A stretch of DNA of 64,000 bases from Octopus sinensis (Eukaryota). The stretch spans positions 44,640,001 through 44,704,000 of the forward strand of contig NC_043002.1 of the NCBI RefSeq assembly GCF_006345805.1, written 5' to 3'. Below the pieces are notes generated by a model. It ran no database searches. It saw only the letters and a list, made by a program, of their open reading frames with translations, and was not told the DNA's origin. Position 1 is the stretch's first letter, and every line of letters begins with the position of its first letter. The position numbers and the translations under genes were made by a program. Shown piece by piece: positions 1,561 to 64,000 of this stretch.

Positions 1561-1564
1561 GAGG

Positions 1565-24477: not shown

Positions 24478-25022
24478 TAGGCAATATAAATGCACGCAGC
24501 CTAGTGTAGTCTTCGAAACCGGATCACCTACTCAATGACTTCAGGTCACTAGCATTGTTGTCGTGGCTATCAGTGAGATAAGACTTCCAATCCTAAGAGA
24601 CGCTGAGGAAAATCGTCGCAACCGACGTACTCGCGGCGAGACTGGCTCTGGACCAATTCTTCAAGGCTAAGTACGAAGAATGCATTCAGAGAGTTAAGGC
24701 GCGTGCTATGAGAAACAAGGAAACGGAAGCATCTCAATGGAGTCGAGTAGTAGAGAAGCAACGTGGAAACAAGCCACAATTCGGTATTTAGCCGCATGGG
24801 AATCGACCCCAGCAGATATGTGTAGCATTTCAGAAGCGCTTCGCTCAACTGTATGGATAGAATCGCAGTCCGGAATATAGGATGGACTTCAGTTCCTACC
24901 TCGACGGCATGCGACAACTTTCGGCAAAGAAAGTGGAACATTGCGAAATGCCCATAACAGCCACTGAAATAGGATTTTATGATGGGCTGCACGAGGGTAA
25001 ACCGCTTGGTTTGGATGGTCTG
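24478..25022 (+). mobile_element. Tx1/L1-clade ORF2 remnant (APE N-terminus fused by deletion to the linker and RT start)
   Basis: NINARSL...HLLNDFRSL...VAISEIRL (APE start), then DFSSYLDGMRQLSAKK...MPITATEI...GKPLGLDGL. Similar to NFSAYLDGQPKLSEEK at about 476-520. Confidence 0.75.
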
Positions 25023-44935: not shown

Positions 44936-45068
44936 GCTAGTGGCGCAATGGGACAGTGGTTACGACATATGAATATGTTATATACGATTTACAACAATGT
45001 TGGCCTCCAGGTGCAAAATCTCTACACATTCACACACATTTAACTACATATATATATATATATATATA

Positions 45069-45127
<59 letters not shown>

Positions 45128-45133
45128 ATATAT

Positions 45134-45179
<46 letters not shown>

Positions 45180-45201
45180 CATACATACATATATATATAT
45201 A

Positions 45202-45545
45202 TGGTAGTGGTGCAATGGGACAGTGGTTACGACAGCGGAGTTGCGGTCGTGGGATTGCGGTTTCGATTCCCAGACCGGTTGTTGTGTTTATTGAGCGAAA
45301 ACATCTAAAGGTCCACGAGGCAGGTGGTGGTGGCGAACCCTGCTGTACTCTTTCAACACGACTTTCTTTCACTCTTCCTTTCTGTTTCAAAGGGACAGCC
45401 TTGTCACTAAATCAATCTCACTGAATCCCACTGAGAATTACATTAAGGGTACACGTACCTGCGGAGTTCTCAGCCAGGAGCAGGCTGTTCCGTTGATCAG
45501 ATCAACTGGAAACCTAGTCGTCGCAACCCACGGAGTGCCATGACA
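45202..45545 (+). mobile_element. tRNA-headed SINE (family C-like)
   Basis: GGTGCAATGGGACAGTGGTTA...GGTTTCGATTCCCAGACC...TTGAGCGAAAACATCT. Confidence 0.65.
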
Positions 45546-45870
45546 CATATGTGTGTGTGTGTCTCCGTGTAGTTTTATATATGCGTACATATACACATAC
45601 ATGTATGTATACATACACCCACTCACACACAGACATATATATATATATATGTGTGTGTGTGGTGTGTGTGTGTGTGAGAGTGTGTGTCGGTTGCCCAAAA
45701 GTTGCCCGGCAATAAATCAAAATTCCATAAATGTTCAATTTTATTTATTCATTCCAATTATGAATGTTTAATAATTTAACGTTAAATTAACGGGTTTTTT
45801 TTCACTTTCACAACATTTGTCTATTTATTAACGAAGTTTCATATAAAATGATGTTTTTGTTATAATTTGG

Positions 45871-45916
45871 GAATTAGATGGTTGTGATTTACTATGAGAT
45901 GAATTTTCGCAAACGC

Positions 45917-45947
<31 letters not shown>

Positions 45948-46034
45948 GTGTGTGTTATATATACATATATATATGTATATATATATATATGTATATATAT
46001 AGTATATATATATATATATATTATATATATATAT

Positions 46035-46067
<33 letters not shown>

Positions 46068-46083
46068 GTATATATATGTATAT

Positions 46084-46132
<49 letters not shown>

Positions 46133-46474
46133 GTATATATATGTATATATATATATCCGTAATAATGAAGGGTGAATTAATTAATTTGGAATAATTATCA
46201 ATTACACCAAGTAGTCTTCGGCATGTAAAAGCCTCATTCGAGGAGAATTTAAGTAATACTAAGCAATAAAAGGTTTAGCAACGAATTGCCTTACCACATA
46301 CCCAATTTAGAAATAGCAGTCAAAGAGTTATAGCTATTTCTTCTACTAAAAAGGGAGATCTCAGTAAAAACAGCAATTGGAAGGCAGACACAAACAGGTA
46401 AGAGAGAATGAATTGACGGCAATCTATCATACAATTTTAAGTTATCTACGGACGTACGTTTCGAAATCACGTTT

Positions 46475-46528
<54 letters not shown>

Positions 46529-46531
46529 ATA

Positions 46532-46571
<40 letters not shown>

Positions 46572-46615
46572 TATATTATATATAATATATATATATATGT
46601 ATATATATGTATATA

Positions 46616-46650
<35 letters not shown>

Positions 46651-46745
46651 GCTATATCTATATATAACACACACGCGCGCATGCATATATATATATAGAT
46701 ATAGCGTTTTCCAAAATTCATCGCAGTAAATCAAAACCATTTAAT

Positions 46746-46748
<3 letters not shown>
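45871..46748. repeat. About 95-bp inverted repeats (45871-45965 / 46655-46748) enclosing (TA)n blocks and a 310-bp core
   Basis: GATGGTTGTGATTTACT..GATGAATTTTCGCAAACGCTATAT vs ATATAGCGTTTTCCAAAATTCATCGCAGTAAATCAAAACCAT. Confidence 0.8.
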
Positions 46749-46815
<67 letters not shown>

Positions 46816-47008
46816 CACCTACCTATATAACTTCATACATCGAACGAACGTGTCTGATAACATAGCGCTATAAAATATATCGACTGTATTTAAAAGGTCA
46901 ATTATTAACATATCTCACTAGCTGAAACGTTAAAAGAATAAATGTAGAGGTGAATGTAATTATGGAACATCAGTAAAAATCTTGGCAGTTTTCTTATCAT
47001 CGCGCGCC

Positions 47009-47354
47009 GAGCGACGAGCTGACAGAATCATTACCGCGTTGGAGAATCTGCATCGCGGCATTTCTTCGACATCTTTACTTTCTAGTTCATATTCCGCCAG
47101 TATTGATTTTGTCTTTTATTATTTCGTGTGTTACTACAATAACCATCAGTTGAGCACTGGCTCCATGTAGTCGACGAGTTCCCGCCCCCAAAATTTCAGG
47201 TCTTGTGCCTGGAATAAAGAAGATTATTATTACAAGATTATTACAAGAGAACAAACAGAATTGTTAGCACGCTGGACACAAAAGAAAAAGCTTAGTGGCA
47301 CTCCGACCGTGTTTAGGGTCGGTGTTAAAATTTCACCGAAGTCAATTTTGTCAT
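47009..47354 (+). mobile_element. Two SINE family A copies; the second is 3'-truncated against the LINE array
   Basis: Heads at 47009 and about 47255. The second copy fuses to array unit 7 at about 47355. Confidence 0.75.
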
Positions 47355-47982
47355 CAGCCATGCTCTTTTCAGCTCTGGGGGCACTTTGCCAACTCGCACT
47401 CTGGCCGCGCGTTTTCCAAAGTACGATGGCAAAAGCACCCATTCTCCCGATCTTATTGCCTACGTTGAGTGCTTAATTGCTTCCTCTTCTTATACAAAGC
47501 GCACCTCCACAGTAGCTAATTACTCCCTCTTGTTATAAATGTATTTAGTCTTTTTATATTCTTCAAACATTCTTTAATAGCCTCTATTGTCTCTATTTCT
47601 ATTTTCCTTGTTGCTATCTTCATTGACTTATGTATCACCGTCCTTTTCATTATATTGGTTGTTAGTTCTACAGGCGGCGTTAATTTCAGTGTATTTCCAT
47701 CTCTTTCCAGCAACTTTTCGCATTCCTTCATTTTCGTGGTTTAACCTTTATTTCACGTACCTCTATTGTTTCCACGTCTATCCCTTTTCCAGTTGCAGCC
47801 GCATTATTCAGGCCACCTTCTGGCGCTTTCTCCATTTTTCCCACAATGGGAAAAAAGAACAATTCAAAATAACAACAGCAACAATTTGAATAGTAACAAG
47901 CAATCAGACAAATATTTAACACTATGACTTACGTCTAACGCGACAAAAATAACATCGTTATGAACAATTCAAACCGCGTGTG
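47355..47982 (-). mobile_element. Array unit 7: family C ORF1-only element, 5' part only, decayed
   Basis: ORFs MGKMEKAPEGG...AAATGKGID and LKLTPPVELTTNIMKRTVI match unit 5. Confidence 0.85.
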
Positions 47983-47992
47983 CATGTGATGC

Positions 47993-48982
47993 TCTTCGTT
48001 TCTTTATTTCGGCACTATGGCCACAACAGGGGGGATACTACAAAGACAGGCACAATGACACAGAGGGGACAAAAAAAATAAAACGAATGAAAATGAGATG
48101 TTATATAAAAATCAAAAAAGAAACTGGCTGCATGGACCCCACTCCCATGTAGTACCATTTGAACGTTTATATCAATTATTTACAAAAGTTCTATTTTATT
48201 GTTTCTTCTTAATCATCGTTTTTCTTCTCTTATTTTTTAAATGGAACAATTTTACGTTTTTTTTCTCCTTTTTAATATCTCATGAAAGGTTCTAAATCTT
48301 TTTGTTCCACTACTGGTGACAATTCTTTGAACTCCACCATCAGTCCTGGCGGGTCAATCCCTCTTCCACACATGTCTTTTACTTTGTTGTAAGTGTCCTT
48401 GTCTACCACGATGGCCTTCACATTCTCGGAATACACATCCGTGGGCAAATTTACTCTTATAATATCTTTAAACTTTGATACTTTCTTTTCAGTTTTTTTG
48501 TTTTTTTTTTTTTTGCTTTTCGCGTACGTCACAAAATTCCATCGACATTTTTCTTTTCTTTTTTGTTTTTACTTTCCCTGCTCCACTCTTGGTACCTTCT
48601 CCTTTTCTCCTTCTATTCTGATCAGTCTCTGCAGTTGCCTCCTTATGCAATTCCTCCTCGAACGCTCCTTCAAATTCCTTTTCGCTTTCTTTATCCATCA
48701 CCATTTTGTCTTCCTTCCTTGTGGCCTCCTTCACAACCTCCTTTTCTAACTCTTCTTTCTTCTTTTCCTGCTGCTCTGACGGAGAGCTCACTCTCCTACT
48801 TCTATCCCTCCTCCGTTACTTTCTCCCTTATATCCACCTGTACCACCTGGTCCATGCTCTCCTGCATCTCTATCTGCTCTATTTGTTGTTCCCTCTGGGA
48901 GAACCTCGACTTCATTTGGGCTTTTTTTTTCCCACATGTTTAACATATAGGCGGCCTGCCTTCCACAACCACTCTCACAGTG
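47993..48982 (-). mobile_element. Array unit 6: 5'-truncated family C-like element
   Basis: Starts mid-ORF at VRVVVEGRPPIC. C-terminus ...AIVVDKDTYNKVKDMCG...DLEPFMRY*, then 3' UTR and AATAAA. Confidence 0.85.
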
Positions 48983-48993
48983 CAATATGACAC

Positions 48994-50806
48994 TCGTATT
49001 TCTTTATTTGGCACTACGGCCACAGCACAGAGAGGATACTACAAGAACAGACACAATACCACAGTGGGGACACAAAACATAAAACAAATGAAAATGAGAT
49101 GTTATATAAAAATGAAAAATGAAATGGCTGCATGGGCCCCACTCCTCATACAGTAGTATTTGAACGTTATATAAGATATTTACAATCGTTCTACTTTTCT
49201 TGTTTTTTTTCTTAATCATCGGTTTTCCTCCTTTTTTAAAAATGGAACAATTTTACTTTTTTTTAACTTTTTTTTTAACAAAGCAATTTTACTTTTTTTC
49301 CTTTTTAATATTTCATGAATGGTTCTAAATCTTTTAGTTCTTCTAATGGTGGCAATTCTTTGAACTCAGCCATCACTCCTGGCGGGTGAATCCCGCTTCC
49401 ACACATGACTTTTACTTTGTTGTAAGTGTCCTTGTCCACAACGATGGCATTCACATTCTCGGAATACACATCCGTGGTTAACTTTACTCCTATGATATGT
49501 TTGAATTCTAAAACTTTCCTTTCAGTGTCTTTGCTTTTCGCGTACGTCAAAAATCCCATCGAAATTTTCCTTATTTGTTTTTTCCTGTTCCACTCCTGGT
49601 ACCTTCTTTTCTTCCTCCACTCTGAACAGTCCCTCGTACAGTTGCAATCCTGAATCTCTTTCCTCCGCTGGAACAACCGGTGTCTTCACGACTGTCTCCT
49701 CCTTATGCAACTCTTCCTCGAACACCTTTTCAATTTCCTTTTCACTTTCTTTATCCACCACTATTTTGTCTTCCTTCCTTCTGGTCACAACCTCCATTTC
49801 CGCCTCTTCTTTCTTCTTTTTCTGCTGCTTTCATGGAGAGCTCACTCTTCCACTTTTTTTTCTTTTTACACCGTGAAATCCTCCTCCGTTGCTTTCTCTT
49901 TATCTCGACCTGTACCACCTGGTCCGTACTCTCCTGCCTTTCCGTCTGCTCTATTTGTTGTTCTCTCTGGGGGCACCTAACCTTCATGTGGCCTTTCTCC
50001 CTACAGGCAAAACACAGAGACGGTCTGCTCCCTACCACCTCTCTCAATCTTAAATCATCGGGCAGCACTATCTTTTCAACAATTCAGTTTAGGTCCTCCG
50101 CTGTTGCTTGGACGGTCACCTATATTCCGTATCCCCAGTAGTTTATCCTTTCTGTCCTTGTAGACTTCAGTATCTTGGCCTCCTCTTTCATATTGAACAT
50201 TATGGCTGTCATCAGCCATGTTTCTTTGAGTTCCGAGGGCACTTTGCCAACTCGCACTCTGGTCAAACGTTTGCCACAATTCAATTGCAGAGGCACCCAT
50301 TCCTCCGATCTTATTGCCTCCGTGGAGTGCTTAATTGCTTCCTCTTCTGATGTAAAGCGCACGTCCACAGTAGTGTACTTTCTCTTTCTTGTTATAAATA
50401 TGGTTAATTTCTTAATACTTTTTAAACACTCTTCAATCGCCTCAAGTTTCGCTATTTCTATCTTCCTTGTTGCTATCTTCATCGTCTTAAATATCACCGT
50501 CCTTTTCGTTACATTTGTTGTTAATTCCACAGGCGGCGTTAATTTCAATGTATCTCCTTCATTTTTCGTGGTTCAACTCTTATTTCACGCACTTCCAGCG
50601 TTTCTCGTCTATCCCTTTTCCAGTTGCAGCTGCATATCTGTGGCCACCTGCTGGCGTTTTCTCTGTTTTTCCCATAATGGGGAAAAAACAATTCAAAATA
50701 ACAATAGCAACAATTTGAACAGCAACGTTCAATCAAACAAATATATAACACTATGACTTGCGTCTAATACGGCAACAACTCTTATGAACAACTCAAACCG
50801 CCTGTG
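48994..50806 (-). mobile_element. Array unit 5: full-length family C element, frameshifted ORF1
   Basis: ORF pieces 50120-50548, 49751-50068 (CFACREKGHMKVRC knuckle) and 49305-49676 (...DLEPFMKY*). Confidence 0.88.
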
Positions 50807-50817
50807 CAATATGACGC

Positions 50818-52419
50818 TCTTCTTTTTCTTTATTACCCACGAGGAGCCACACAGAGGGGGGACACTACAAACATTGGGGACATAAAACATCACGATTACA
50901 AAGAATGAAAGATGAATTTTGAAAATGATATTATGAAAGTGATGCTAACCGGCCCCATCCGCTTGCATCACTTACCTGTCCTTTAGTTGTTAATCCCACA
51001 CAAATGCTCCTTGTTCAGTTCCGATACAAAATCCTTCCATCTCCATCCTTTTTTCAAACGTCTCTTCCAAATCCCTCATGATTTTTTCAACCATTCTCAC
51101 TTCATTTACTTCCCAATCCTCCCTTTCACACATTACCATAAACTCGTCCATTCGTTCTTTTCCAATTACTGCATACCTGATCGTTCCTCTCTCACACCAT
51201 TGATACTCTTCCATTTTCTTTTTAATCTTTTCTTTTCCCGTCATACATACAATGTTTGGCATGGGTTCATTTTTTGTGCCTTGGTTGTGTGTGTCTTTTC
51301 TTTTCTGTTTTCTTGTTGGAGGGGAGCGGGTGGGTTCACTGTCTGCAGGGAGAGGGTGGGACTCAGAGGGTGTGATTGGTGCTGGGGGTGGATTGGGGTT
51401 CCGTGTTGTTTTCTTTTCCTCTTTTTCCTGGCTTCTTCCCATTCTTGTGAATTTTCTTCTTCTGTTGTCTCCTTCTCCTCTGGTTTCTGCTCCTTTTCCG
51501 CCTCTCTTTGTGGCTCCGCACCCATTTCTTTCTCTGGGGAGGACAGTTAGCTCTTATGTGGCCCCTCAGGACACACTTGTAAAAACGTGGAGTCTGCCCT
51601 CCACCCACATTCTCATGATTACGCCTCCCAATCTGATGCTTTCTGTTAAGGTCTCCAGTACATCATCTTCTGCTTGTACATTCAGATCCAGTGCTGCGCC
51701 CCTCCAGCCCTCGGTCTTTACCGTGGTATGGAGGATGTCCACTTCATCCTCATGACCGCTAATTATAGCCGCCACAATCCACTCGGCTTCGACGTTTGGG
51801 GGTATTCCCTCGACCCATATTCTGGTAATTTTCCTATTTAAGTATGAGGGCAAAAGGAATACCCTCTCGGATTTCACTGCTTTCGCCGCCATCCTCCTTG
51901 CTATATTCTCACTCTTGAACTGTACTACCACAGTACCATAGCTTGTACCTCTCGTCAGAAATATTATTTCCTCTTCTGTTCTTCTCAGAGCCTTTTCTAT
52001 CCACTCCATATTCACCACTTCGATCTTTCTCTTTCCGTTTGCGTAGACCCTGTATGTAATGGTTCTTTTCCCATACCATTCTCTGCGCTTTGGTGGCGGT
52101 GCTAATTCCACCTCACCGCCGTCCTTCTTAATAAACTTTTGGTAACTTGGCAGCTTGGCTAAGTCCAACTCTCTTCCGATTTTTTAACCTAATTTCTGGT
52201 CCATTCTCCTCACCGCTTCCTCCAATTCCTCCTCAGACGTAGACAAGTCCGATAGGGTTTCGAATCCTCTAGCCGTCTCTCCCATCAGGGAGGGGCCGTC
52301 CTTGTCTGTCTCAACACAGACAGACTAAACCTCGCGCGACCGTACAACAAAAACCGTTTAACAAAATTTACGTGTAACGCAGTAACAAGGAAAAAAATTA
52401 ACTCACGATGAATAAGTCG
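50818..52419 (-). mobile_element. Array unit 4: full-length family A' element, frameshifted ORF1
   Basis: ORF pieces 51566-52168 and 50990-51442. ATG at 52285. Confidence 0.88.
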
Positions 52420-52430
52420 CAATATGACAC

Positions 52431-54079
52431 GCTTCTTGATTCTTTATTACCCACGAGGGGCCACACAGAGGGGACACTACAAACATTGAGGACATAAAAC
52501 ATCATAATTACAAGAATGAAAGATGGATTTTGAAAATGATATTATGAAAGTGATGCTAACGGCCCCATCCGCTGGCATCACTTACCTGTCCTTTAGTTGT
52601 TAATCCCACACAAATGTTCCTTGTTCCGTTCCTATACAAAATCCTTCCATCTCCATCCTTTTTTCAAACGTCTCTTCCAAATCCCTCATGCATTTTTCAA
52701 CCATTCTCACTTCACTTACTTCCCAATTCTCCCTTTCACACATTTCCATAAACTCGTCCATTCGTCCTTTTCCAATTACTGCATACCTGATCTTTCCTCT
52801 GTCACACCATTGATACTCTTCCATTTTCTTTTTAATCTTTTCTTTCCCCGTCATACATAGAATGTTTGGCCTGGGTTCATTTTTTGTGTCTTGGTTTTGT
52901 GTGTCTTTTCTTTTCTGTTTTCTTGTTGGAGGGGAGCGGGTGGGTTCACTGTCTGCAGGGATAGGGTGGGACTCAGAGGGTGTGGGTGGTGTTGGGGTGG
53001 ATTGGGGTTCCATGTTGTTTTCTTTTCCTCTTATTCTCCTCTTCCTCTTTTTCCTGGCTTCTTCCCATTCTTGTGAATTTTCTTCCTCCTCCACTGACTC
53101 CTTCTCTGGTTTCTGTTCCTTTTCCGTCTGTCTTTGTGGCTCGCAATCCATTCTTTCTCAGGGGGAGGGCATTTAGCTCTTATGTGGATCCTCAGGCCAC
53201 ATTTGTAACAACGAGGAGCTCTGCCCTCCACCCACACTCTCATGATTACGTCTCCCAATCTGATGTTTTCTGCTAGGTCCACCAGTACATCATCCTCTGC
53301 CTGCACATTCATTTCCAGTGTCACGCCACTCCATCCATCGGTCTTTACCGAGACATGGAGGATGTCCACTTCATCCTCGTGGCCGCTGATTATAGCCGCC
53401 ACAATCCACTCGGCTTCGACGTTTGGGGTATTCCCTCGACCCGTATTCTGGTAATTTTTCTATTTAAATATGTGGGCAAAAGGAATACCCTCTCGGATTT
53501 CACCGCCCTCGCCGCCATCTTCCTTGCTGTATTCTCACTTTTGAACTGTACTACTACAGTACCATATTTTGAACCTCTAGTCAGAAAATTAATGTCCTCT
53601 TCGGTTCTTCTTAGCGGAAAATTAATGTCTTCTTCGGTTCTTCTATCCACTCCATATTCACCACTTCTATCTTTCTCTTTCCGCTTGTATGTGATGGTCC
53701 TTTTCTCGTACCATTCTTTTCTCTTTGGCGGCGGTGCCAGTTCCACCTCACCGCTGTCCTTCTTAATATACTTCTGGAAACTTGGCAGCCTGGCCAAGTC
53801 CACCCCTCTCTCCTCCGACTTCTTAGTCACTCCGGCATAGGTATAACCCAGTTTCTGGTCCATTTTCCTCACTGCTTCTTCCAGTTCCTCCTCAGACGTA
53901 GACAAGTCTGATAGAGACTCAAAAACTCTTGCCGTCTCTCCCATCAGGGAGGGGCCGTCCTTGTCTGTCTCAACACAGACAGACTAAACCTCGCGCGACC
54001 GTACAACAAAAAGCGTTTAACAAAATTTACATGTAACGCAGTAACATGGAAAAAAAATTAACTCACGATGAATAAGTCG
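52431..54079 (-). mobile_element. Array unit 3: full-length A/A' chimeric element, frameshifted ORF1
   Basis: The 5' half nearly matches unit 2 and the 3' end matches unit 4. ORF pieces 53390-53944 and 52600-53151. Confidence 0.88.
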
Positions 54080-54090
54080 CAATATGACAC

Positions 54091-55720
54091 TGTTCTGACT
54101 TTTTATTGCCCACAAGGGGCGATGCAGAAGGGACATTACAAAACATTGGGGACATAGAACATTATAATTAAATTTATGAAGAATGAATTATTAAATGAAA
54201 AAATGATAATATGAAAGCGATGCTAACGGCCCCATCCGTCAGCATCACTTACCTGTCCTTTGGTTTTCACTGTCACTTAAATGTTCATTCCCAATACGAA
54301 GACCATCCATATCCATTCTTACTCCGAAATACCCCTCCGTATTTTCCACGAATTCATCGCTCATTCTTGTGTCTTTCAACTCCCAATTCTCCCTTTCACA
54401 CCTCAACATAAACTCATCTATTCTCTTCTTTTCAATCACTGCATACCTGGTCTCACCTATTTCATACCATTTATACTCCTCCGTTACCCTTTTAATTTCT
54501 TTCTCGTCTGTCATAGTATAAATGTTCGGTATGGATTCGTTTTCTATGTATTGTTTTTGCGTGTTCTTTTTTTGTTTTCTTGTTGGAGGGGAGCGGGTGG
54601 GCTCACTGTCTGCAGGGATAGGGTGGGACTCAGAGGGTGTGGGTGGAGTTGGGGTGGATTGTTGTTCCGTGTTGTTTCCTTTTCCTCTCATTCTCCTCTT
54701 CCTCGTTTTCCCAGCTTCTTTCCATTCTTGTGAATTTTCTTCGTCTTCTACTGTCTCCTTCTCCTCTGGTTTCTGTTCTTTTTCCTCCTCTCTTTGTGGC
54801 TCGGAATCCATTTCTTTCACTGGAGGAGGGCAGTAGGCTCTTATGTGACCCCTCAGGCCACACTTGTAACAACGTGGAGCTCTGCCTTCCACCCACACTC
54901 TCATGATTACGTCTCCCAACCTGATGTTTTCTGCTAGGTCCACCAGTACATCATCCTCTGCCTGCACATTCATTTCCAGTGTCACGCCACTCCATCCATC
55001 GGTCTTTACCGAGACATGGAGGATGTCCACTTCATCCTCGTGGCCGCTGATTATAGCCGCCACAATCCACTCGGCTTCGACGTTTGGGGGTATTCCCTCG
55101 ACCCTTATTCTGGTAAATTTTCTATTTAAATATGTGGGCAAAAGGAATACCCTCTCGGATTTCACCGCCCTCGCCGCCATCTTCCTTGCTGTATTCACAC
55201 TTTTGAACTGTACTACTACAGTACCATATTTTGAACCTCTAGTCAGAAAATTAATTTCCCCTTCGGTTCTTCTTAGCGCCTCCTCTATCCACTCCATATT
55301 CACCACTTCTATCTTTCTCTTTCCGCTTGTATGTGATGGTCCTTTTCTCGTACCATTCTTTTCTCTTTGGCGGCGGTGCCAGTTCCACCTCACCGCTGTC
55401 CTTCTTAATATACTTCTGGAAACTTGGCAGCTTGGCCAAGTCCACCCCTCTCTCCTCCGCCTTCTTAGTCACTCCGGCATAGGTATAACCCAGTTTCTGG
55501 TCCATTTTCCTCACTGCTTCTTCCAGTTCCTCCTCAGACGTAGACAAGTCTGATAGATACTCAAAAACTCTTGTCGTCTCCCCCATCAGGGAGGGGCCGT
55601 CCTTGTCTGTCTCAACACAGACAGACTAAACCTCGCGCGACCGTACAACAAAAACCGTTTAACAAAATTTACGTGTAACGTAGTAACAAGGAAAAAAATT
55701 AACTCACGATGAATAAGTCG
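54091..55720 (-). mobile_element. Array unit 2: full-length family A element, ORF1 with one early frameshift
   Basis: ATG at 55586 (ORF 55251-55586), shifting near 55325 into ORF 54245-55393, which contains CYKCGLRGHIRAYC. Confidence 0.9.
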
Positions 55721-55731
55721 CAATATGACAC

Positions 55732-57515
55732 TGTTCTATTTCTTTATTACCCACAAAGGGGCCACGAAGAGGGGGACATTACAAGACGGGACATGGGGTA
55801 CATAAAATAAAAATAAAATATGAAGTAAAAGATGAATTATAAGTAATGAGATGGAACGGCTTACGAACCCCCAACTCGCAGTTCCGTTTAAAATACAAAT
55901 GTACATTTCATATATTCCAATACAATTTTACAGTTACATATATTCCAGTTAAAAGTACAATAATTTTACAATTTTACATGTTAACATTACATATATTCCT
56001 GTTCAAAATACAACTTTACATCATATAATTTTACAATTAACAATTCTAATTCTTTTACATTAGACGTTCGTCCGTCATATAATCTAATAGGTCCATTTGG
56101 TCTATTACATCTGGTAATTTATCATACCGTACATAATGCGTTATATGAATAGCATTAAATATCTTTTTTAATTTTGTGTATGTCTCTTTGTCTATAATGA
56201 CGCCTTTTATATCGTCACCATACAGTTTTGGGTTCACCTTCACCCTGACCAACCCTTTCTTACCTACAAGTCTCTTTTCCACTTCTGTATTCTTGATATA
56301 CATCACAACTGCCTTCAGGTTTTTTCCTGTAGGCCTTCTTCCATATTTACACGATTCCAATTGTTCGTTCACTCTTGTCTCCCATTCTTGTTCAAACTCT
56401 GTCCTTGGCCGCTCTCTCGCCTTCTCTTTTACTTCCTGTTCTTTGTATGTTCTCTCTTCTCTCTCTTCTGCTATCTTGCTTTTGATTTTTTTCTTTTTTA
56501 GATCCTTCGGTGGTGATTCCACCCTTGATCTCTTCCTATCTTCTGTTTTTTCCTCTTCTGCACTTGCTCGTTCTTCCTCATTTAACTGCTCCTCCATTCG
56601 TGTTTCCTCCGCTTTCGCTTCCTCCACACACGCATCTTTACACTCCTCTATCACAACCTCTGGTGCTTTTGTTTTTTCCCGCGGGCACACATCCTTCATG
56701 TGGCCCCTCGATTTACAATTATAGCAGATAGGGGGTCTTCCCTCTACCACAACTCGGAGCCGTGTCTCGTCAGGGTAGACCAACTCCTCCGGGATGTTGT
56801 ACAGGTCTCGCACGGTTATGTGTGCTAGAACCTGCACCGTATATCCCCACCACTTCACCTCTGCTGACTTCTCCACCTTCAGTACCTCCACATCATCCTT
56901 GCAGTTAAACAGCACTGCCGCCAGCAACCTTTCCATATTAAATTCGGGTGAGATTCTATTGATTCTCATCCTCACTGCTCTCCTTCCGCAGTAACTTGGT
57001 AGCAAAGTCCACTTATCCGATTTCAAAATTCTTGTTGCATTCTTTTTTGCCTCATTTTCTGTTTCAAAATATACCACCACCGTGGCATACTTCCTTCCTC
57101 TTTTGAAAAATGTGGGTTCACCCTCAATTTCCTTCAGACACCTTTCTACTTCTTCCATTTCCGCTACTTCAATTTTTTTCGACTCCACACACCACGTCCT
57201 GTACGTTATAGTACGCTTCTCTGCACTGCTTTCCTCCTCCTCGGACGGTGTGACTATCACGCAGTCACCCTCCCTCTTTAAACTGTCGAAATACTTTTGC
57301 AAAGTCTTCTGTTCGACCACCACCTCCTCCATCTCCAGCTCACCAGCAACCAGGCCTCTGCCTGCCGCTCGCGCGTAAGTCTGCTCTTGCATTTTCAAGA
57401 AAAAAACTATTCCACGTCCTCCAACGAACTCGAACTCACAACCCCCTCACTCGAAACAAACACACCAGAATAACTCCAAATAACCTATTTTCAAAAGACT
57501 GGAAGCCTAAGCCTT
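55732..57515 (-). mobile_element. Array unit 1: full-length family B element with intact ORF1
   Basis: About 120-bp 5' UTR, an uninterrupted ORF, about 320-bp 3' UTR and AATAAA. No ORF2. Confidence 0.92.
56055..57398 (-). CDS. LINE ORF1/gag-like nucleic-acid-binding protein (RRM-like region, CX2CX4HX4C knuckle, charged region, unassigned C-terminal domain); first ATG at 57392
   Basis: 447-codon open frame with RGRKYATVVVYFETENEAKK (RNP-like) and CYNCKSRGHMKDVC. Confidence 0.85.
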   Translation of the reverse strand: MKMQEQTYARAAGRGLVAGELEMEEVVVEQKTLQKYFDSLKREGDCVIVTPSEEEESSAEKRTITYRTWCVESKKIEVAEMEEVERCLKEIEGEPTFFKRGRKYATVVVYFETENEAKKNATRILKSDKWTLLPSYCGRRAVRMRINRISPEFNMERLLAAVLFNCKDDVEVLKVEKSAEVKWWGYTVQVLAHITVRDLYNIPEELVYPDETRLRVVVEGRPPICYNCKSRGHMKDVCPREKTKAPEVVIEECKDACVEEAKAEETRMEEQLNEEERASAEEEKTEDRKRSRVESPPKDLKKKKIKSKIAEEREERTYKEQEVKEKARERPRTEFEQEWETRVNEQLESCKYGRRPTGKNLKAVVMYIKNTEVEKRLVGKKGLVRVKVNPKLYGDDIKGVIIDKETYTKLKKIFNAIHITHYVRYDKLPDVIDQMDLLDYMTDERLM

Positions 57516-57879
57516 CAATATGACACTGTTCTATTTCTTTATTACCCACAAAGGGGCCACGAAGAGGGGGACATTACAAGACGGGACATGGGGTACATAA
57601 AGTAAAAATAAAATATGAAGTAAAAGATGAATTATAAGTAATGAGATGGAACGGCTTACGAACCCCCAACTCGCAGTTCCGTTTAAAATACAAATGTACA
57701 TTTCATATATTCCAATACAATTTTACAGTTACATATATTCCAGTTCAAAGTACAATAATTTTACAATTTTACATGTTAACATTACATATATTCCTGTTCA
57801 AAATACAACTTTACATCATACAATTTTACAATTAACAATTCTAATTCTTTTACATTAGACGCTCGTCCGTCATATAATC
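57516..57879 (-). mobile_element. Array unit 0: 3'-terminal 364 bp of a family B element, fused to the Gypsy integrase
   Basis: Matches 55721-56084 with 4 substitutions by my count. Confidence 0.92.
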
Positions 57880-60395
57880 CCATATTTGAACATTTTAAAA
57901 AATACTGCGTTACTTATATTGAAATAGTTTGTATTATTAAAATTATTCTTCTGCATTTGTTGTTTCCTTCTTGGTAACAATTTATCAAATACTGATTGTA
58001 CCTTTCTGGCGAACATTAATTCAGTGGGTGACATACCTACATTTGTGTTGGGGTTTGGCGTTATTCTATAAACGTGTAAACCTTTTGTCAGTGTATTATC
58101 TACCAATGATTCGTTTCTGGTTTTCCTCAACGCTCTTTTAAACGTATCTACGAACCTCTCCGCAAGTCCAGTTGACCTCGGATGATATGACGGTGTAGTG
58201 TTATGTTCCATTTGATGCGTCTTATAAAAATCTTTGAACTCTTTTGCTGTAAATTGTGTGCCATTATCTGACACTATAGTATCCGGCACACCAAAATGTG
58301 CAAGTGTTTCATCCAAACATTCAATAGCTACTTTCGTAGGTGGTTTTCTGCACCTACAAATTTCAGTCCATTTTGTGTAGCTATCTACCACTACCAGATG
58401 ATATACCCCGTTTAGTGGTGCTGCGAAATCTATGTGTAGCCTAGACCACGGTATATCTATCTTTGGCTATGGTTGAATATTTACTGGAGGGTCCTAAGCT
58501 GCCACGGCGCATCTCCTGCATGCTTTCCCTAGTTTCTCGATATCTTTATCTTTACTAGGCCAGTAAATATAACTCCTTATAATGAGCTTCATCCTTACAA
58601 TTCCAGGATATCCTACATGAAATTCTGCTAGCATTCTATTTTGTAGTACAACGGGTATCACAACCTTCTGAGCGTACATCAACACATTGTCACACATCGA
58701 ATAGTATTTCGAACATGTGTTACGCTCAGTGACAATTTTTTTGTAATTGTCTCATTCATTATTATTTTTTTCATTTTCTTAATAAACGCATCTTTTTCTG
58801 CTTTACTTTTTATCTCTTCCAATGGAATTGGTAAATTCCAGCCCAACATTTCAGAGAATATTTTTTAATTCAATTTCTGATTTTAACACTGTTATTACTG
58901 TATCTTCTAGCGGTTCGTTATACTTCGGGATTAATCGCGACAGCCCGTCGGCATGTCCCAATTTCTCCGAAAGAAAAAAATTCCAATTTGAAATCATAAT
59001 TTAATATGGTAGTCCCCCAGAGCTGTAATCGATTGGCTGTGTGTGTGGGAACACCTTTTCTGATACATAATTTGTTAGCAGTGAACGGTGATCTGTCTGT
59101 AATGTAAACTTTCTGCAGTGCTAGAAGTTATGAAATTTCTTCACTGCAAAAATAATGGCTTGTGCCTCTTTCTCTATCTGGTTGTAATTTTTTTTCCAAC
59201 GATAGTAATGTACGTGACGCATGTGCGATCGGTTTTACGTTACCATTTTCCAACTTATGTAAAATTACTGCTCCGATCCCAGACTCTTTAGCAGCTGATG
59301 CTACAGTTATTTTTAGTTTCAGATCAAAATTTGCTAGAGATAGCTCTGACGTTAACATTTTAAAAAATGTCTTCGAATGCTTTTTAGCATTCGTCAACCC
59401 AACACCATTTCACATCTTTTATCAGTAGTTTGTTTAACTCATGCATTCTTGGAAGATACATTTGATAGTAATTCGCAAGACCTAGAAAAGCATGTAAGGC
59501 TATTTTAGTCGGAGGAGGCATATCTTTAATTGCATCTGCCCTCGACGGGTCCGGTCATCGTCTATTCCTGTCGATAATTTGTCCTAAATACTAAAGTTCA
59601 GATAAGAAAAATTCCTCACTCAGTGTGAAACCCTAATCTCTCATTTTCTCAAAAACACACTTTACGTGCTCAACAGGCTAATCACTATGTACACTTTTAA
59701 ATAATATATCATCCAGGTATGGAATTACGAATTCACTATGAGCCAACACTGGATTCATAACCTATTGAAAATTGCAGGTGCGACTTTTATGCCGAAAGGA
59801 AATCCGTTAAACTTATAACCGTTGTGCGTGTTTATCGTTATCAGCTTGGAACATTCTTCGTCTACCTGCAGCAATAAATAAGCTTCCGATAAATCCAACT
59901 TAGAAAAGAGTTTGCCTCCATTAAGTTTGGCAAAATCTTCTATGGACTTGGTAACAGATAGTTATAAGTTTTCAGACATTCATCAAATCCCGCCGAAAAA
60001 TCAGCGCAGACCCTTAATTTGTTCTTTTTCTTACACACAGTTGGTGCTGCCCATTGCGAATAGTCTAATTTTTGTATTACACAAATGTTCTCAAGTCTTT
60101 TCAGTTCTTTTTCTATTTGATTTATTGCCGCAAAAGACACAGCTCTCTTTGGTTTAAAAACCGGAACGGTATTTTCTTTTAGTAAGATTTTCACTTTTAT
60201 TTTCGTACATGAGCCAAGTTCCTCTGAAAAATCATCAGGATACATTTTTTTTTAAAGTTCTTAGACGCCTTGTTCGAACTGGCGCGCGACGCATTCACAT
60301 TATTACAGAAAATACTTATGGGCAAATCCCACAAATTAAATGTCTCCATCCAATCTGTATTAAAGAGGTTCATAGTATTTTCTGATACCAGATGA
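57880..60395 (-). mobile_element. Decayed Ty3/Gypsy LTR retrotransposon pol (protease end, RT, RNase H, integrase), 3'-truncated
   Basis: YSQWAAPTV, LRVCADFS and PYLDDIL (RT); ASAAKESGIGAVILH...IAHASRTL (RNase H); HVGYPGIVRMK...YWP...CRRC and VVVDSYTKW...SDNGTQF...YHPRSTGLAERFV (integrase). No LTRs identified. Confidence 0.92.
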
Positions 60396-60402
60396 AATGG
60401 AC

Positions 60403-60454
<52 letters not shown>

Positions 60455-60865
60455 AAAATGAAGTGGGGTGTTGTCACGTATACATTCATAAATAAATAAG
60501 CACAAAGCTTAGAATTAGAATTACAGACGTTATCTAGGGACCAAATCTTTACATTTCCATCAGTATTGTGAGTCTAAAACAAATTGTTTGGAGCCGATTC
60601 TTATCATCAATTTCAGATTTGTGGTAGGATTTCTACAGATCATTGCATCTTAACAAAGCAATCACTATCCCACAAATATTCTGCTAATTACAGCAGTAAC
60701 ATGAACTTAAACCATCAGTACAATTATTTGCGTATCCTTCCGAGATACTTAAGAGCCGTAAACAGCAAAACATTGTGAACGTAAATTCATCAGTTTGGAA
60801 GAGTACATACATTTTACAGCTAAATTCGTGATTTCATGTAAACTGAACTTCGGAGATTCACATGA

Positions 60866-60912
<47 letters not shown>

Positions 60913-61778
60913 TGCACACATGCACACACACACGCGCACACACATACACACACACACACACACACCACACACACACACACACACATACAAACGAGCCCGA
61001 ACTTTCTTTAGGAGAGTGTATCTTTTCTTCCTGTCGAGGAAATAAGTTAGACTACGGCAATGCTGGTGTACTGCCTTGAATTTTTAGTGTAATGGATTAA
61101 CACAAGTACTTATACATTTTTAAAGCCAATACACCACGCAGTGGGTCCAGAAGCATATAGTTGAGAAGCAAGCTTCATGCAACACGGTCACGCCTCCGCT
61201 CATATATACACATACACACACAAATACACACACACAAACACACTCACACATACATATATGCGTATTATCCAAAATCTGCAGTATTATATATTCATTACGG
61301 CCGATCTTACCAATCACTTTCGTGCTAGTTATTCAAAGCTCTGTTAGATAACAATCCGATTATGTAACCCTGCTCTCATCAGAGATAGCGTCAAACCGAT
61401 CGGTAAGATCAGCTGTAATGAATATATAATTTGGTACATTTCGGATAATATACCACTCTATTGACAGATATACGAGTGCACTTTTTCCTGACTTATGACT
61501 CTTGGACGACTTATATACACACACACACACACATACAGGGAGAGAGAGGGGGAAAGAGAATAACAAAATATCCTTGAAATGTTTTTCCGCACGTGATAAA
61601 AGAAAGAAAAGACAGCATACTGAATCATTTACAAACAAACCCTCATACAAGCAACATTGACTAAAATTACTTAAATAAACACGAAATTGCAATATTTTCA
61701 CCAATTTCAATGTTATGATTAGCGAAACACGAAACCGGTCGACTAACATAATATTCTATTATTTCGTGTGCAGTTTCC

Positions 61779-61812
<34 letters not shown>

Positions 61813-61912
61813 TGTGTGTGTGTGTGTGTGTGTGTGTGGATATATATATATATATATTTACCGTTGGCGATTTTTTCCTCCGTCTTGCCTTCCTTGGATC
61901 TTTTTTTTTCCT

Positions 61913-61952
61913 AGGTTCCTGACGAAGAGCTCCGCTCGAAACGTTAAATCCT
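61913..61952 (+). ncRNA. Minimal hammerhead-like motif in a PLE pLTR-like fragment (about 61860-62055)
   Basis: CTGACGA (61919-25), stem II GAGC/GCTC, GAAACGTT and an imperfect stem I AGGTT/AAATCC. Confidence 0.6.
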
Positions 61953-62340
61953 CCCTCTTTCTTTCCTTTCCTGAACGTCCAATAACACTATACTTGTTCC
62001 ACGTCCTTGCGTTGTTGTGTTTTCTCTTTGTGTTTTCATGTTTGGATTAACTTTATATATATATATATATATCAAGTAAGTTAGGGGTTGTGGATCCAAC
62101 TAAGGGATAACACTTATCCAATATACTGTTGGTATAATACCCAAATAATTAATACGCAAGTGTTTTTAATTGCAATGCAATAAACTTATTGTATTAAATG
62201 AGTGAAGGTAAAGAAATATTTTACCATTAATTTATATTACAAATAAGAAAATGGAGAAACACACTAGCTGGTTTATCAGCTTTAGGATATTAGAATGTTG
62301 ACTTATTTATTTATCAAAACGACAACCATAATAACATACA

Positions 62341-63322
62341 TATATTTCTGACCAAGCTCCATCAGAACATATAAAAGCTAATCAGCATATCCACATTTAT
62401 ATAGACGAGTGAATTCGTATTTCCCTCCAACTTTACCATGTGCGTCACAAGGTAGTACTGCTGAAAAAGATTCGCAGTTTTGTTATCGGGGAGTGATTTA
62501 TAATTCCTGAAATATTATGTTGATAACGGAAATGAATTTTTATAATTCTGATCCTGAAACGCGTCCATAATGAATCGAAGACTGTTTGATTTCATTATTT
62601 TTCTTCTTTTTGCCTGTGTGAGTTACAAATATTGTTATCTGTGGAGACATTTTTGTAGAAAAAAGAAATATCAGTCTTTTGGCTGCTATTTCTAAAACTT
62701 TCGGTATGTGGTCAAGCAACTTGTGGTCAAACCCTTAATTATTGTTATAATTATATATAAAAAAAACTCTTTGTATAACTTTTTACCGAATATGGTTCTT
62801 TTCCATACCGAAAACTACTAGGTGAAATTTGTTAATTTTATTAGATTAATAATTTTTTACCCCATATCTGTAATGATTATTTCACTCCCCGATAACAAAA
62901 CTGCGAATCGTTTTCTGCAGTACTATCTTGTGACGCACATGGTAAAGTTGGAGGGAAATACGAATTCACTCGTCTATATAAATGTGGATATGCTGATTAG
63001 CTTTTATATGTTCTGATGGCGCTTGGTCAGAAATATAAGGGATAAGTTTTCCTAGCATTTCCAGATTTATAATTCTCGAAATATTATGTTGATAACAGAA
63101 AGGAATTTTTATAATTCTGATCCTGAAACGCGTCCATAATGAATCGAAGACTGTTTGATTTCATTATTTTTCTTCTTTTTGCCTGTGTGAGTTACAAATA
63201 TTGTTATCTGTGGGGACATATTTTTGTAGAAAAAAGAAATATCAGTCTTTTGGCTGCTATTTCTAGAACTTTAGGTATGTGGTCAAACAACTTGTTGCTA
63301 AACCCTTAATTATTGTTATAAT
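62341..63322. repeat. Rearranged duplication A-B-x-A(inverted)-B
   Basis: 62341-62497 is the near reverse complement of 62882-63038. 62497-62752 is directly repeated at about 63066-63322. Confidence 0.9.
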
Positions 63323-63354
<32 letters not shown>

Positions 63355-63447
63355 CTAGATACATATCACTTATACACCCATGTCCATGAGTACACATAAT
63401 ATTTAATTATTACCAATATTATTATTATTATTAGTAGTAGTAGTAGC

Positions 63448-63484
<37 letters not shown>

Positions 63485-64000
63485 ATAATAATAGATTCTG
63501 TGTAATCTTCATTTCACAATACATAGTATAGGAGATTCAAATATATAGTATACTATAATATAATGTAAACAGATTTTTATGAAAGATGTAATCTTATTAA
63601 TTTTAAAATCACAGTCAATATATTCATATATCATAACATCATAACAGTTAGACTAGGGTTATTACATTATAATTCTTCATGCACATAAGTACATGCGTAT
63701 GTGCAACAAGTAGATGCATATTCATATATATACCTACGTACAAATATACATCAATATCTATGAGATTTTTTTCTTTTTCATCATAACGAAAGTATACATA
63801 CATGTTAGAACACCAAATTTATAATATAATTTCACTCCCTACAACCTAAATACAATTGACATGTAAGGGCACAATAAATTACTTTTTCCAAAGGCTGATT
63901 TTAATGATTTTAATAATTTATATTAAGTTTTTTTTTAATAACTACTTGTATTCTTATCTTAAATGTATTGAATTTTATAATGTATGTATTTATGTTATTA

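What the first reader, a model, noticed from the sequence alone, without database searches (positions are those of the whole stretch)
47983..57526. The same 11-bp motif (CAATATGACAC on +, GTGTCATATTG on the element strand) at every unit junction, including a 5'-truncated one
Seen: the motif is at 57516-26, 55721-31, 54080-90, 52420-30 and 48983-93, with one change at 50807-17 (CAATATGACGC) and a degenerate form at about 47983-92. It lies about 10-15 nt after each unit's AATAAA, with no poly(A). At 48983 the downstream unit starts mid-ORF (VRVVVEGRPPIC), yet the motif is intact, so it is not part of an element's 5' end. Inference: it is either a target-site duplication regenerated at each insertion into a specific sequence, or a conserved 3' terminus that later elements use as their target (self-targeting). 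Both imply a sequence-specific endonuclease. The original target flanks are lost at both array ends.
Basis: partly seen in the sequence, partly recalled or inferred. Interest (0 to 1): 0.86.

Follow-up and report, generated by a model that had tools for sequence, protein, structure and literature searches.

The report
Target-site spacer between stacked octopus LINE parasites
The repeated 11-base motif is most likely a short duplicated piece of one insertion site, left between eight gag-only retrotransposon copies that landed one after another at the same spot in an octopus genome; this is a known kind of event, seen here in a new host and element type.

Summary
GTGTCATATTG (minus strand) is exact at five unit junctions, has one change at a sixth and is degenerate at a seventh.

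The units form a head-to-tail array on the minus strand (57879-47349). They belong to three families (A, B, C) of 1.6-1.8 kb elements. Each encodes only an ORF1-type protein (tandem RRM-like fold, one CCHC knuckle) and no reverse transcriptase. The families share only a roughly 110-nt 3' tail.

The closest homologues are octopus proteins. In Octopus vulgaris, O. sinensis and Argonauta hians the same ORF1 and tail belong to complete LINEs. Their ORF2 (APE endonuclease, RT, zf-RVT) is closest to Xenopus Tx1 and human L1.

Solitary relatives end a few bases after AATAAAGAAA, have no poly(A), and carry 11-20 bp target-site duplications of unrelated sequence. An O. vulgaris array carries its own 14-18 nt spacer between units and also left of its first unit.

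So the motif is best read as a target-site duplication kept between successive insertions at one site, as reported for Tx1-mobilised SINEU-3 and for Drosophila R1. An RNA-borne 3' terminus is less likely but not excluded. Both array ends are lost. I rate it a new member of a known kind, of moderate interest.

The parts
57870..58391 (-). Left flank: truncated integrase ORF of a degraded Gypsy/Ty3-like element. RT-like ORFs continue up to about 60245.
   Evidence: Pfam rve E=6.4e-13. The ORF stops mid-domain where the array begins.
57516..57879 (-). U0t: 5'-truncated family-A copy (the last 364 nt of A), ending in the motif at 57526-57516.
   Evidence: 98.9% identical to U1A nt 1432-1795. The junction with the integrase is at 57880/57879.
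55721..57515 (-). U1A: full-length family-A unit. It has an intact 445-aa ORF1 (57392-56055), a tail hairpin (55763-55749), AATAAA (55748-55743) and the motif (55731-55721).
   Evidence: zf-CCHC; tandem RRM-like fold, pLDDT above 88 for residues 20-240.
54080..55720 (-). U2B: family-B unit with a frameshifted ORF1, ending in the motif at 54090-54080.
52420..54079 (-). U3B: mosaic family-B unit. The 5' ~1100 nt are 96-100% like U2B and the 3' ~550 nt are 95% like U4B. The motif is at 52430-52420.
   Evidence: (sliding identity).
50807..52419 (-). U4B: family-B unit with a decayed ORF1, ending GCGTCATATTG (50817-50807).
48983..50806 (-). U5C: full-length family-C unit, with several stops and frameshifts. 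The motif is at 48993-48983.
   Evidence: It is 72-81% identical to O. bimaculoides copies.
47983..48982 (-). U6C: 5'-truncated family-C unit (from about nt 760), ending in the degenerate motif GCATCACATG (about 47993-47983).
47349..47982 (-). U7C: family-C unit cut off at about nt 603-634 by unrelated sequence. This is the right end of the array, and the original flank is lost.
48983..57526 (-). Six well-preserved copies of the spacer (G[T/C]GTCATATTG), one at the 3' end of each of U0t to U5C. Best read as the retained target-site duplication.

Best explanation
The region is an interstitial head-to-tail stack of non-autonomous, ORF1-only derivatives of Tx1/L1-like LINEs in an octopod genome.

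Each unit has a 5' UTR, an ORF1 (two RRM-like domains, one CCHC knuckle, a coiled coil and a C-terminal domain) and a 3' UTR. The last ~110 nt of the 3' UTR (a small hairpin, then AAUAAAGAAA, then a short family-specific end) is shared with autonomous LINEs. That tail is presumably what the partner's ORF2 protein recognises in trans.

Insertion is by target-primed reverse transcription without a poly(A) tail, and it creates an 11-20 bp target-site duplication. Members of three families inserted repeatedly at the same site. Every insertion regenerated the duplication, so one copy of it, (GT)GTCATATTG, remains between each pair of neighbours, whether the downstream unit is family A, B, C or a 5'-truncated C.

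The few bases just upstream of the invariant core vary because that is the priming junction and the family-specific RNA end.

Shown: the element identity, the lack of ORF2, the shared tail, TSDs of this length in relatives, and a TSD sandwich in an O. vulgaris array.

Inferred: that the window's motif is target-derived, that the insertions were successive, and that the site (or site plus resident tail) is a preferred endonuclease target. Later unequal exchange or gene conversion probably added to the array (the U0t/U1A pair, the mosaic U3B).
For: - Identity. An exhaustive profile search with the ORF1 core gave 847 hits. The best named ones are octopus proteins. In L005, L006 and L007 the homologous ORF1 is followed by an ORF2 with Exo_endo_phos, RVT_1 and zf-RVT. 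That ORF2 is closest to Xenopus Tx1 (31% identity, E=9e-92) and to human L1 ORF2p (E=1.4e-61).
- No ORF2. The window units have none. The same ORF1-only build occurs in O. sinensis L008, O. vulgaris L018 and O. bimaculoides L010.
- Shared tail. It is found by nhmmer across species. It holds a 4-bp hairpin with GC/CG covariation.
- Solitary relatives have clean TSDs of unrelated sequence. L007 has 16 bp, L018 has 11 bp, L008 has 12-19 bp and L006 lies in (ATT)n.
- O. vulgaris array L005. It has at least 3 units of 5273 bp at 99% identity. A 14-18 nt spacer lies between units and also left of unit 1, and only its 5' part varies.
- Window spacer. The core is identical after three unrelated families, and all 7 differences lie in the 5' 8 of 17 nt.
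- Family-specific ends are conserved in other species but followed there by other sequence: ATCAGAA in family B and ACG..GAGCG in family C.
- Precedent. Tx1-clade target preference and tandem SINEU-3 copies 'sandwiching a TSD' are described in PMC4494074. R1 tandems separated by a 33-nt duplication, and jockey and P-element dimers formed by double insertion, are described in PMC5932611.
Against: - Both ends of the window array are lost, so the defining test (the same sequence outside the first and last unit) cannot be made. The left flank, a Gypsy-like integrase, has only a weak resemblance to the motif. Its edit distance is 3 of 11, matched by about 1-3% of random positions before correcting for the offsets tried.
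- No other copy of families A, B or C from the same genome could be obtained, so it is unknown whether solitary copies there also end in the motif.
- The O. bimaculoides family-C tandem junction (L004) has no comparable spacer.
- No common target sequence is visible among relatives, so why one site was hit at least 4-7 times is unexplained.
Confidence: 0.65

Rival explanations
1. The motif is carried by the RNA. Either it is the true 3' terminus of these families in this species, or it is a few bases of downstream flank picked up by read-through past the AAUAAA. New copies then home to existing copies because the motif on the RNA anneals to the nicked motif in DNA. This would be self-targeting, as R1, SART and TRAS use read-through target sequence.
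For: The motif follows every tail and is better conserved than the bases before it. AAUAAA lies only 9-12 nt upstream, so cleavage and polyadenylation would fall in or beyond the motif. The first unit has no motif copy on its left. PMC4494074 notes that co-transcription with the target strengthens specificity.
Against: Three families with no detectable nucleotide similarity outside the shared 3' tail, each with relatives in other octopods that lack the motif, would each have had to acquire the same 9-11 nt. Solitary relatives start reverse transcription at the family-specific end, with no transduced flank.
Confidence: 0.18
2. The array was made mainly at the DNA level. One or two insertions were amplified by unequal sister-chromatid exchange, rolling-circle replication or re-integration of a circle, so the motif is simply copied along with the unit.
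For: U0t and U1A are 98.9% identical. U3B is a U2B/U4B mosaic. L005 units are 99% identical. L004 is a circularly permuted single unit, as expected from a re-integrated circle. Expansion by unequal exchange is described in PMC5932611.
Against: It cannot produce precise A-to-B, B-to-C and C-to-truncated-C junctions between families with no nucleotide similarity outside the tail. The hypervariable 5' part of the spacer, in both the window and L005, indicates separate priming events.
Confidence: 0.07
3. A single insertion event produced a concatemer. The reverse transcriptase jumped from the 5' end of one RNA to the 3' end of the next, as R2 and L1 reverse transcriptases can do in vitro.
For: All units are head to tail, with full-length 5' ends abutting the preceding 3' end.
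Against: A jump would join the RNA 5' end directly to the RNA 3' end, with no constant 9-11 nt spacer, unless the spacer is RNA-borne (which is rival 1). The units also show a strong decay gradient: A is intact, B is frameshifted and C is heavily decayed. That argues for different ages.
Confidence: 0.04

Closest known systems
Tx1-clade (L1 superfamily) LINEs and the SINEs they mobilise: Tx1L, Keno, Kibi, Koshi, Tx1-Mar and SINEU-3 (Kojima 2015, PMC4494074)
   Same: The partner-type ORF2 has an APE endonuclease, an RT and zf-RVT, and its best named hits are Xenopus and Alligator Tx1. ORF1 has RRM-like domains plus CCHC. Non-autonomous partners share the LINE 3' tail. TSDs are long. Tandem insertions that 'sandwich a TSD' are reported for SINEU-3.
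   Different: No defined repeated target was found. Relatives' TSDs are unrelated. The passengers here are 1.6-1.8 kb ORF1-coding elements, not SINEs. Arrays mix three families. Clade placement rests on best hits, not on an RT phylogeny.
Tandem TE arrays formed by double insertion: the Drosophila R1 array with a 33-nt rDNA duplication between units, and jockey and P-element dimers (McGurk and Barbash 2018, PMC5932611)
   Same: Units are head to tail and separated by a spacer of TSD length. Neighbours have distinct 5' truncations. Later expansion or homogenisation by unequal exchange is plausible.
   Different: There are eight units from three families at one site, rather than dimers of one family. 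The target is not a known multicopy gene. The outer TSD copies are not preserved.
HAL1 (half-L1), the ORF1-only L1 derivatives of mammals (from memory: Bao and Jurka 2010; the term is held in PMC5753468, listed)
   Same: A LINE derivative that keeps a coding ORF1 and the LINE 3' end but has lost ORF2, and so depends on ORF2 supplied in trans.
   Different: The LINE lineage differs (Tx1-like, with CCHC ORF1, no poly(A) and a specific 3' tail). There are at least three old families shared among octopod genera. The elements are arranged in arrays.
Drosophila telomeric HeT-A/TART/TAHRE arrays
   Same: Mixed-family, head-to-tail arrays of non-LTR elements with variable 5' truncation. HeT-A is also gag-only.
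   Different: HeT-A attaches to chromosome ends, with oligo(A) junctions and no TSD. This array is internal to a 64-kb window, has a constant non-A spacer, and shows no telomeric repeats.

Membership tests
L1 superfamily / Tx1-like LINE (autonomous relatives of the units) | ORF2 with an N-terminal APE-type endonuclease followed by a reverse transcriptase | tested here: met
   L005 ORF2 has Exo_endo_phos and RVT_1. L006 and L007 have the same order by tblastn.
L1 superfamily / Tx1-like LINE (autonomous relatives of the units) | C-terminal Cys/His motif (zf-RVT) | tested here: met
   PF13966 E=1.7e-08; the motif reads CPRCGRDRETVPHAIVHC.
L1 superfamily / Tx1-like LINE (autonomous relatives of the units) | RT groups with Tx1 in a phylogeny | not tested
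   Only best named hits are available: Xenopus TX1 (31% identity, E=9e-92) and human L1 ORF2p (E=1.4e-61) against R2 (E about 1e-24). No tree was built.
L1 superfamily / Tx1-like LINE (autonomous relatives of the units) | Sequence-specific target, as in many Tx1-clade families | tested here: inconclusive
   One site in the window was used repeatedly. But four solitary relatives have unrelated TSDs.
Autonomous LINE (the window units themselves) | Encodes its own reverse transcriptase and endonuclease | tested here: not met
   tblastn with the L005 EN and ORF2 finds nothing inside 47349-57879. The units are 1.6-1.8 kb, with ORF1 followed directly by the tail.
ORF1-only non-autonomous LINE derivative (HAL1-like) | Coding ORF1 homologous to a LINE ORF1, the LINE 3' tail retained, and ORF2 absent | tested here: met
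   The same build is seen in L008, L010 and L018.
TSD-sandwiched tandem insertion (double or multiple insertion) | A spacer of TSD length between every pair of units | tested here: met
   A 9-11 nt invariant core lies at 6-7 junctions. TSDs of relatives are 11-20 bp.
TSD-sandwiched tandem insertion (double or multiple insertion) | The same sequence flanks the array on the outside | tested here: inconclusive
   Window: the left flank has no convincing copy and the right end is truncated. It is met on the left side of the O. vulgaris array L005.
TSD-sandwiched tandem insertion (double or multiple insertion) | Units are independent insertions | tested here: met
   There are three families with no similarity outside the tail, and two different 5' truncations.
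Penelope-like element with pLTR | GIY-YIG endonuclease with a PLE-type RT, and a hammerhead ribozyme in the repeat | tested here: not met
   There is no Rfam hit in 46000-64000 at E up to 1 apart from microsatellite-like miRNA noise. The units have no RT or GIY-YIG.
Tandem LTR retrotransposons sharing LTRs | The repeat between internal regions is an LTR, and the internal region carries gag-pol | tested here: not met
   With the unit taken as tail plus body, 2 of 7 pairs mismatch in family. With the unit taken as body plus tail, none do. The ORF1 stop codon lies inside the shared tail. Solitary relatives have LINE termini with TSDs and no LTRs.
Rolling-circle (CRESS or geminivirus-like) integrated concatemers | Rep gene, and an origin nonanucleotide in the loop of a conserved stem | tested here: not met
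   CAATATGAC only resembles TAATATTAC. No Rep was found, and the downstream arm differs with each neighbouring unit.
Telomeric HeT-A/TART-type array | Located at a chromosome end, with oligo(A) junctions and no TSD | tested here: not met
   The array has non-repeat flanks on both sides within the window, and the spacer is constant and not A-rich.

The most novel reading that the evidence does not exclude
These ORF1-only elements and their LINE partners may home to the junction beside a resident relative, whatever the local sequence. The machinery would recognise the conserved 3' tail (as DNA, or through nascent RNA) and nick just beyond it, so mixed-family interstitial arrays would grow by self-recognition rather than by a fixed target sequence. 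This fits four observations: tandem junctions in 4 of 9 sampled loci from four genomes, a different spacer in each array, mixed families within arrays, and the lack of any common target among solitary copies.
Probability: 0.15. Interest if true: 0.7.

Novelty: new member of a known kind. Interest (0 to 1): 0.35.

Why it matters
The result explains an odd-looking constant motif as an ordinary by-product of target-primed reverse transcription. It also identifies the repeat as a family of LINE parasites for which my searches of the held papers found no description: ORF1-only, Tx1/L1-like elements with at least three old families shared among octopod genera.

These elements often sit in mixed head-to-tail arrays. 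Such arrays are raw material for satellite DNA. They are also a likely source of assembly gaps: the two O. bimaculoides tandem loci are broken by several runs of N, and the O. vulgaris array ends in one.

If the site preference proves strong, the partner endonuclease would be a further example of target-selective integration in the Tx1 clade. The finding does not open a new mechanism as it stands.

Tried and rejected
- The first protein search, with the whole 447-aa ORF, found nothing. Its candidate list hit the 8000 cap, probably filled by words from the Lys/Glu-rich stretches. The core-only profile worked.
- An exact look-up of the window ORF1 in public assemblies found no record, so the source species could not be named.
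- A scan of metagenome contigs for tail plus motif gave three contigs. These are chance matches with no other similarity and 49% GC.
- An Rfam search found no hammerhead or other relevant family.
- Folding the last 145 nt of each unit gave no stability beyond shuffles, with z from 0.1 to 1.4. Only a 4-bp hairpin just 5' of AAUAAA has comparative support.
- An LTR reading, a Penelope-like reading and a rolling-circle origin reading were each tested and not met (see the membership table).
- The test for a degenerate motif copy in the left flank was weak and not significant after allowing for the offsets tried.
- Logan contigs carrying ORF1 homologues (L011-L017) did not include informative 3' ends.
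- The nearby Gypsy-like element was considered as the specific target. A related Gypsy fragment lies near family-C units in O. bimaculoides, but in a different position and orientation, so there is no support.


Full report
**1. Observation**

The 11-mer CAATATGACAC (+ strand) is exact at 48983, 52420, 54080, 55721 and 57516. It has one change at 50807. In total there are eight hits with at most one mismatch against 1.85 expected, and no shuffle reached eight. A degenerate copy (GCATCACATG on the minus strand) lies at about 47983-93.

The spacings equal the unit lengths: 1795, 1641, 1660, 1613, 1824 and 1000 nt. On the minus strand the motif begins 9-12 nt after an AATAAA, and there is no poly(A).

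**2. Anatomy**

Read on the minus strand, the region is a head-to-tail array:

- U0t (57879-57516): the last 364 nt of family A.
- U1A (57515-55721): full length, with an intact 445-aa ORF.
- U2B, U3B and U4B (55720-50807): family B.
- U5C (50806-48983): family C.
- U6C (48982-47983): family C, starting at about nt 760.
- U7C (47982-47349): family C, cut off at about nt 603-634.

Families A, B and C have no detectable nucleotide similarity except for the last ~110 nt. That shared stretch includes AATAAAGAA and the motif.

Pairing each body with the tail that follows it gives six matched pairs and no mismatch. Pairing each tail with the body after it gives two mismatches. So the tail is the 3' end of a unit, not a promoter or an LTR.

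On the left, the array abuts a truncated integrase ORF of a degraded Gypsy-like element (rve, E=6.4e-13). On the right, it ends inside U7C.

**3. What the units are**

Pfam sees only a weak CCHC knuckle in the ORF. An exhaustive profile search with the conserved core gave 847 hits. The best named hits are proteins of Octopus vulgaris, O. bimaculoides, O. sinensis and Argonauta hians. The window is therefore very probably from an octopod. Its own ORF is not on record.

I fetched the loci that encode these homologues.

- In O. vulgaris (L005), the homologous ORF1 is followed by an ORF2 with Exo_endo_phos, RVT_1 and zf-RVT.
- The same layout is seen in O. sinensis (L006) and A. hians (L007).
- That ORF2's best named relatives are 'transposon TX1' proteins of Xenopus and Alligator, at 31% identity and E=9e-92.
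- Its best solved relative is human LINE-1 ORF2p (E=1.4e-61), against about 1e-24 for R2.

The window units contain no ORF2. They are ORF1-only, non-autonomous derivatives of Tx1/L1-like LINEs. The same ORF1-only build occurs in O. sinensis (L008, B-like), O. vulgaris (L018) and O. bimaculoides (L010, A-like and C-like). The families therefore predate the split of these genera.

An AlphaFold model of the family-A protein is confident for residues 20-240 (pLDDT above 88). Its nearest folds are tandem-RRM proteins. After that region come the CCHC knuckle, long helices and a small C-terminal domain.

The shared tail is detectable by nhmmer in all these loci. It contains a 4-bp hairpin immediately 5' of AAUAAA, with GC/CG covariation. 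In that test 81.7% of cells were paired, no shuffle reached the observed covariation score (0 of 500), and the slid controls scored much lower. This is modest evidence for a recognition stem.

L1-Tx1 LINEs are listed as recently active in O. vulgaris (13 families; PMC13282606). That paper has no occurrence of 'ORF1' and mentions 'tandem' only for the TRF program.

**4. What the motif is**

Solitary relatives define the element termini.

| Locus | Element end | TSD |
|---|---|---|
| A. hians LINE (L007) | ...AATAAAGAAATG | 16 bp, TCTTCAACTTATGTTT |
| O. vulgaris ORF1-only (L018) | ...AATAAAGAGAAA | 11 bp, TGCTGGGTTCG |
| O. sinensis B-like (L008) | ...AATAAAGAAATCAGAAAT | 12-19 bp, (CAGAAAY)GTTAGCACGCCG, inside a SINE-like head |
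| O. sinensis LINE (L006) | n/a | lies within (ATT)n |

None of these has a poly(A), and none has GTGTCATATTG.

The O. vulgaris locus L005 is itself an array of at least three 5273-bp units at 99% identity, ending in an assembly gap. A 14-18 nt spacer, CCGAYAGGACGTTA(CTTT), lies between its units. The same spacer also lies immediately left of the first unit, where unrelated flank begins. That is a TSD sandwich. Only the 5' few bases of that spacer vary between junctions.

The window shows the same pattern. In the 17 nt before each unit end, the seven differences among six junctions all lie in the first eight positions, and GTCATATTG never varies.

The variable bases are partly family-specific. 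They are conserved in other species, where they are followed by other sequences:

- B-type ATCAGAA: in the window and in O. sinensis.
- C-type ACG..GAGCG: in the window and in O. bimaculoides.

The simplest reading is that the element RNA ends just before the core, and the core is target DNA duplicated at each insertion. Its length of 9-11 nt is within the 11-20 nt range seen in relatives.

**5. How the array arose**

Precise junctions between unrelated families, and two different 5' truncations, require several independent insertions at one site. This is the mechanism described in two places:

- Tx1-mobilised SINEU-3: 'tandem insertions ... sandwiching a TSD' (PMC4494074).
- R1, jockey and P-element tandems formed by double insertion (PMC5932611).

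Each insertion regenerates the duplicated target, so a favoured site stays available. The enzyme must come in trans from a LINE with the same tail.

Decay runs from left to right. A is intact and its two copies are 98.9% alike. B is frameshifted. C is heavily decayed, with a degenerate spacer. This suggests that newer units were added on the 5' side, but it is an inference.

DNA-level processes also acted. U3B is a mosaic of U2B-like and U4B-like parts.

Tandem junctions occur in 4 of the 9 loci examined: the window, L004, L005 and L010. This is far more than random insertion would give. Each array has a different spacer, or none.

**6. What remains open**

The outside copies of the putative TSD are missing in the window. 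The left flank resembles the motif only weakly. No second locus from the same genome could be obtained.

So an RNA-borne motif, as a true terminus or as read-through flank, with homing by annealing remains possible (about 0.18). It would require three old families to have gained the same bases.

Why one site was used so often is not explained. Solitary relatives show no shared target. Either this site is an unusually good endonuclease target, or a resident tail attracts new insertions (the novel reading, about 0.15).

**7. Verdict**

The 'sequence-specific endonuclease' is supported only as a site preference of an APE-type LINE endonuclease acting in trans.

This is a new member of a known kind: a TSD-sandwiched tandem insertion of Tx1-like LINE derivatives. 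Its descriptive novelty is the ORF1-only octopod families and their mixed arrays. Interest is moderate.

Noticed in passing
L004:8470-10390 and window 47349-47360: The O. bimaculoides locus L004 holds a circularly permuted single family-C unit: nt 604 to the end, then a junction lacking TCATATT, then nt 1 to 603. Its two outer ends abut exactly in unit coordinates, as if a one-unit circle had re-integrated. The window's U7C breaks within about 3 nt of the same family-C position. The antisense strand there reads GCTGTCATC, with TCATATTG 15 nt away. This coincidence is unexplained.
   Followed up: partly
window 52420-54079: U3B is a clean mosaic. Its 5' ~1100 nt are 96-100% like U2B and its 3' ~550 nt are 95% like U4B. 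This points to gene conversion, unequal exchange or template switching between subfamilies.
   Followed up: yes
window 48979-48982: The 5'-truncated U6C starts with CAC, the same three bases that begin full-length family-C units, before jumping to about nt 760. It may be an internal deletion or a microhomology join rather than a plain truncation.
   Followed up: no
L007:6504-6545 and 9097-9140; L008:6109-6165 and 18200-18229; window 47199-47222 (+): Short sequences carry the same hairpin plus AATAGAGAAAT or AATAAAGAAG tail without an adjacent ORF. They are probably SINEs or truncated copies mobilised by the same LINE group. The window example was seen by eye only.
   Followed up: no
window 47255-47340 (+) and L008:11062-11095: A tRNA-like SINE head (GTTAGCACGC...GCTTAGTGG) abuts the broken end of U7C. 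In O. sinensis, the same kind of head is the target of the B-like insertion (TSD GTTAGCACGCCG).
   Followed up: no
window 57870-60500 (-) and L004:5921-7126: A degraded Gypsy/Ty3-like pol (RT to integrase) flanks the array. A 68%-identical fragment lies 1.3 kb from the family-C units in O. bimaculoides, but in the opposite orientation. This is probably just an abundant element.
   Followed up: partly
window 42-1661 (+), 24597-25022 (+), 10254-10739 (+): Degraded ORF2 fragments are 29-38% identical to the O. vulgaris Tx1-like ORF2. None has the array's tail nearby.
   Followed up: partly
window 16124-18068 (-): Two ORFs look by eye like a Penelope-type RT and a Cys-rich GIY-YIG-like domain. Pfam gave no significant hit.
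   Followed up: partly
L012-L017 (Logan runs SRR11869384-94): An identical 294-aa ORF1 homologue (P0004) sits on near-identical ~1.7 kb contigs in six sequencing runs, with no LINE tail detected on them. It may be an expressed or domesticated copy.
   Followed up: no
L010:9960-14590: An O. bimaculoides array holds two A-like units and a C-like unit with an intact 233-aa ORF, broken by four assembly gaps. The one readable junction has the spacer-like sequence TTACCTGTTATTATATTG, which ends in ATATTG like the window motif.
   Followed up: partly
window 45000-46850, 60830-61260, 63400-63500: Long (TA)n, (CA)n and (TAG/TAA)n microsatellites flank the array. They gave spurious miRNA-family matches in Rfam.
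   Followed up: no
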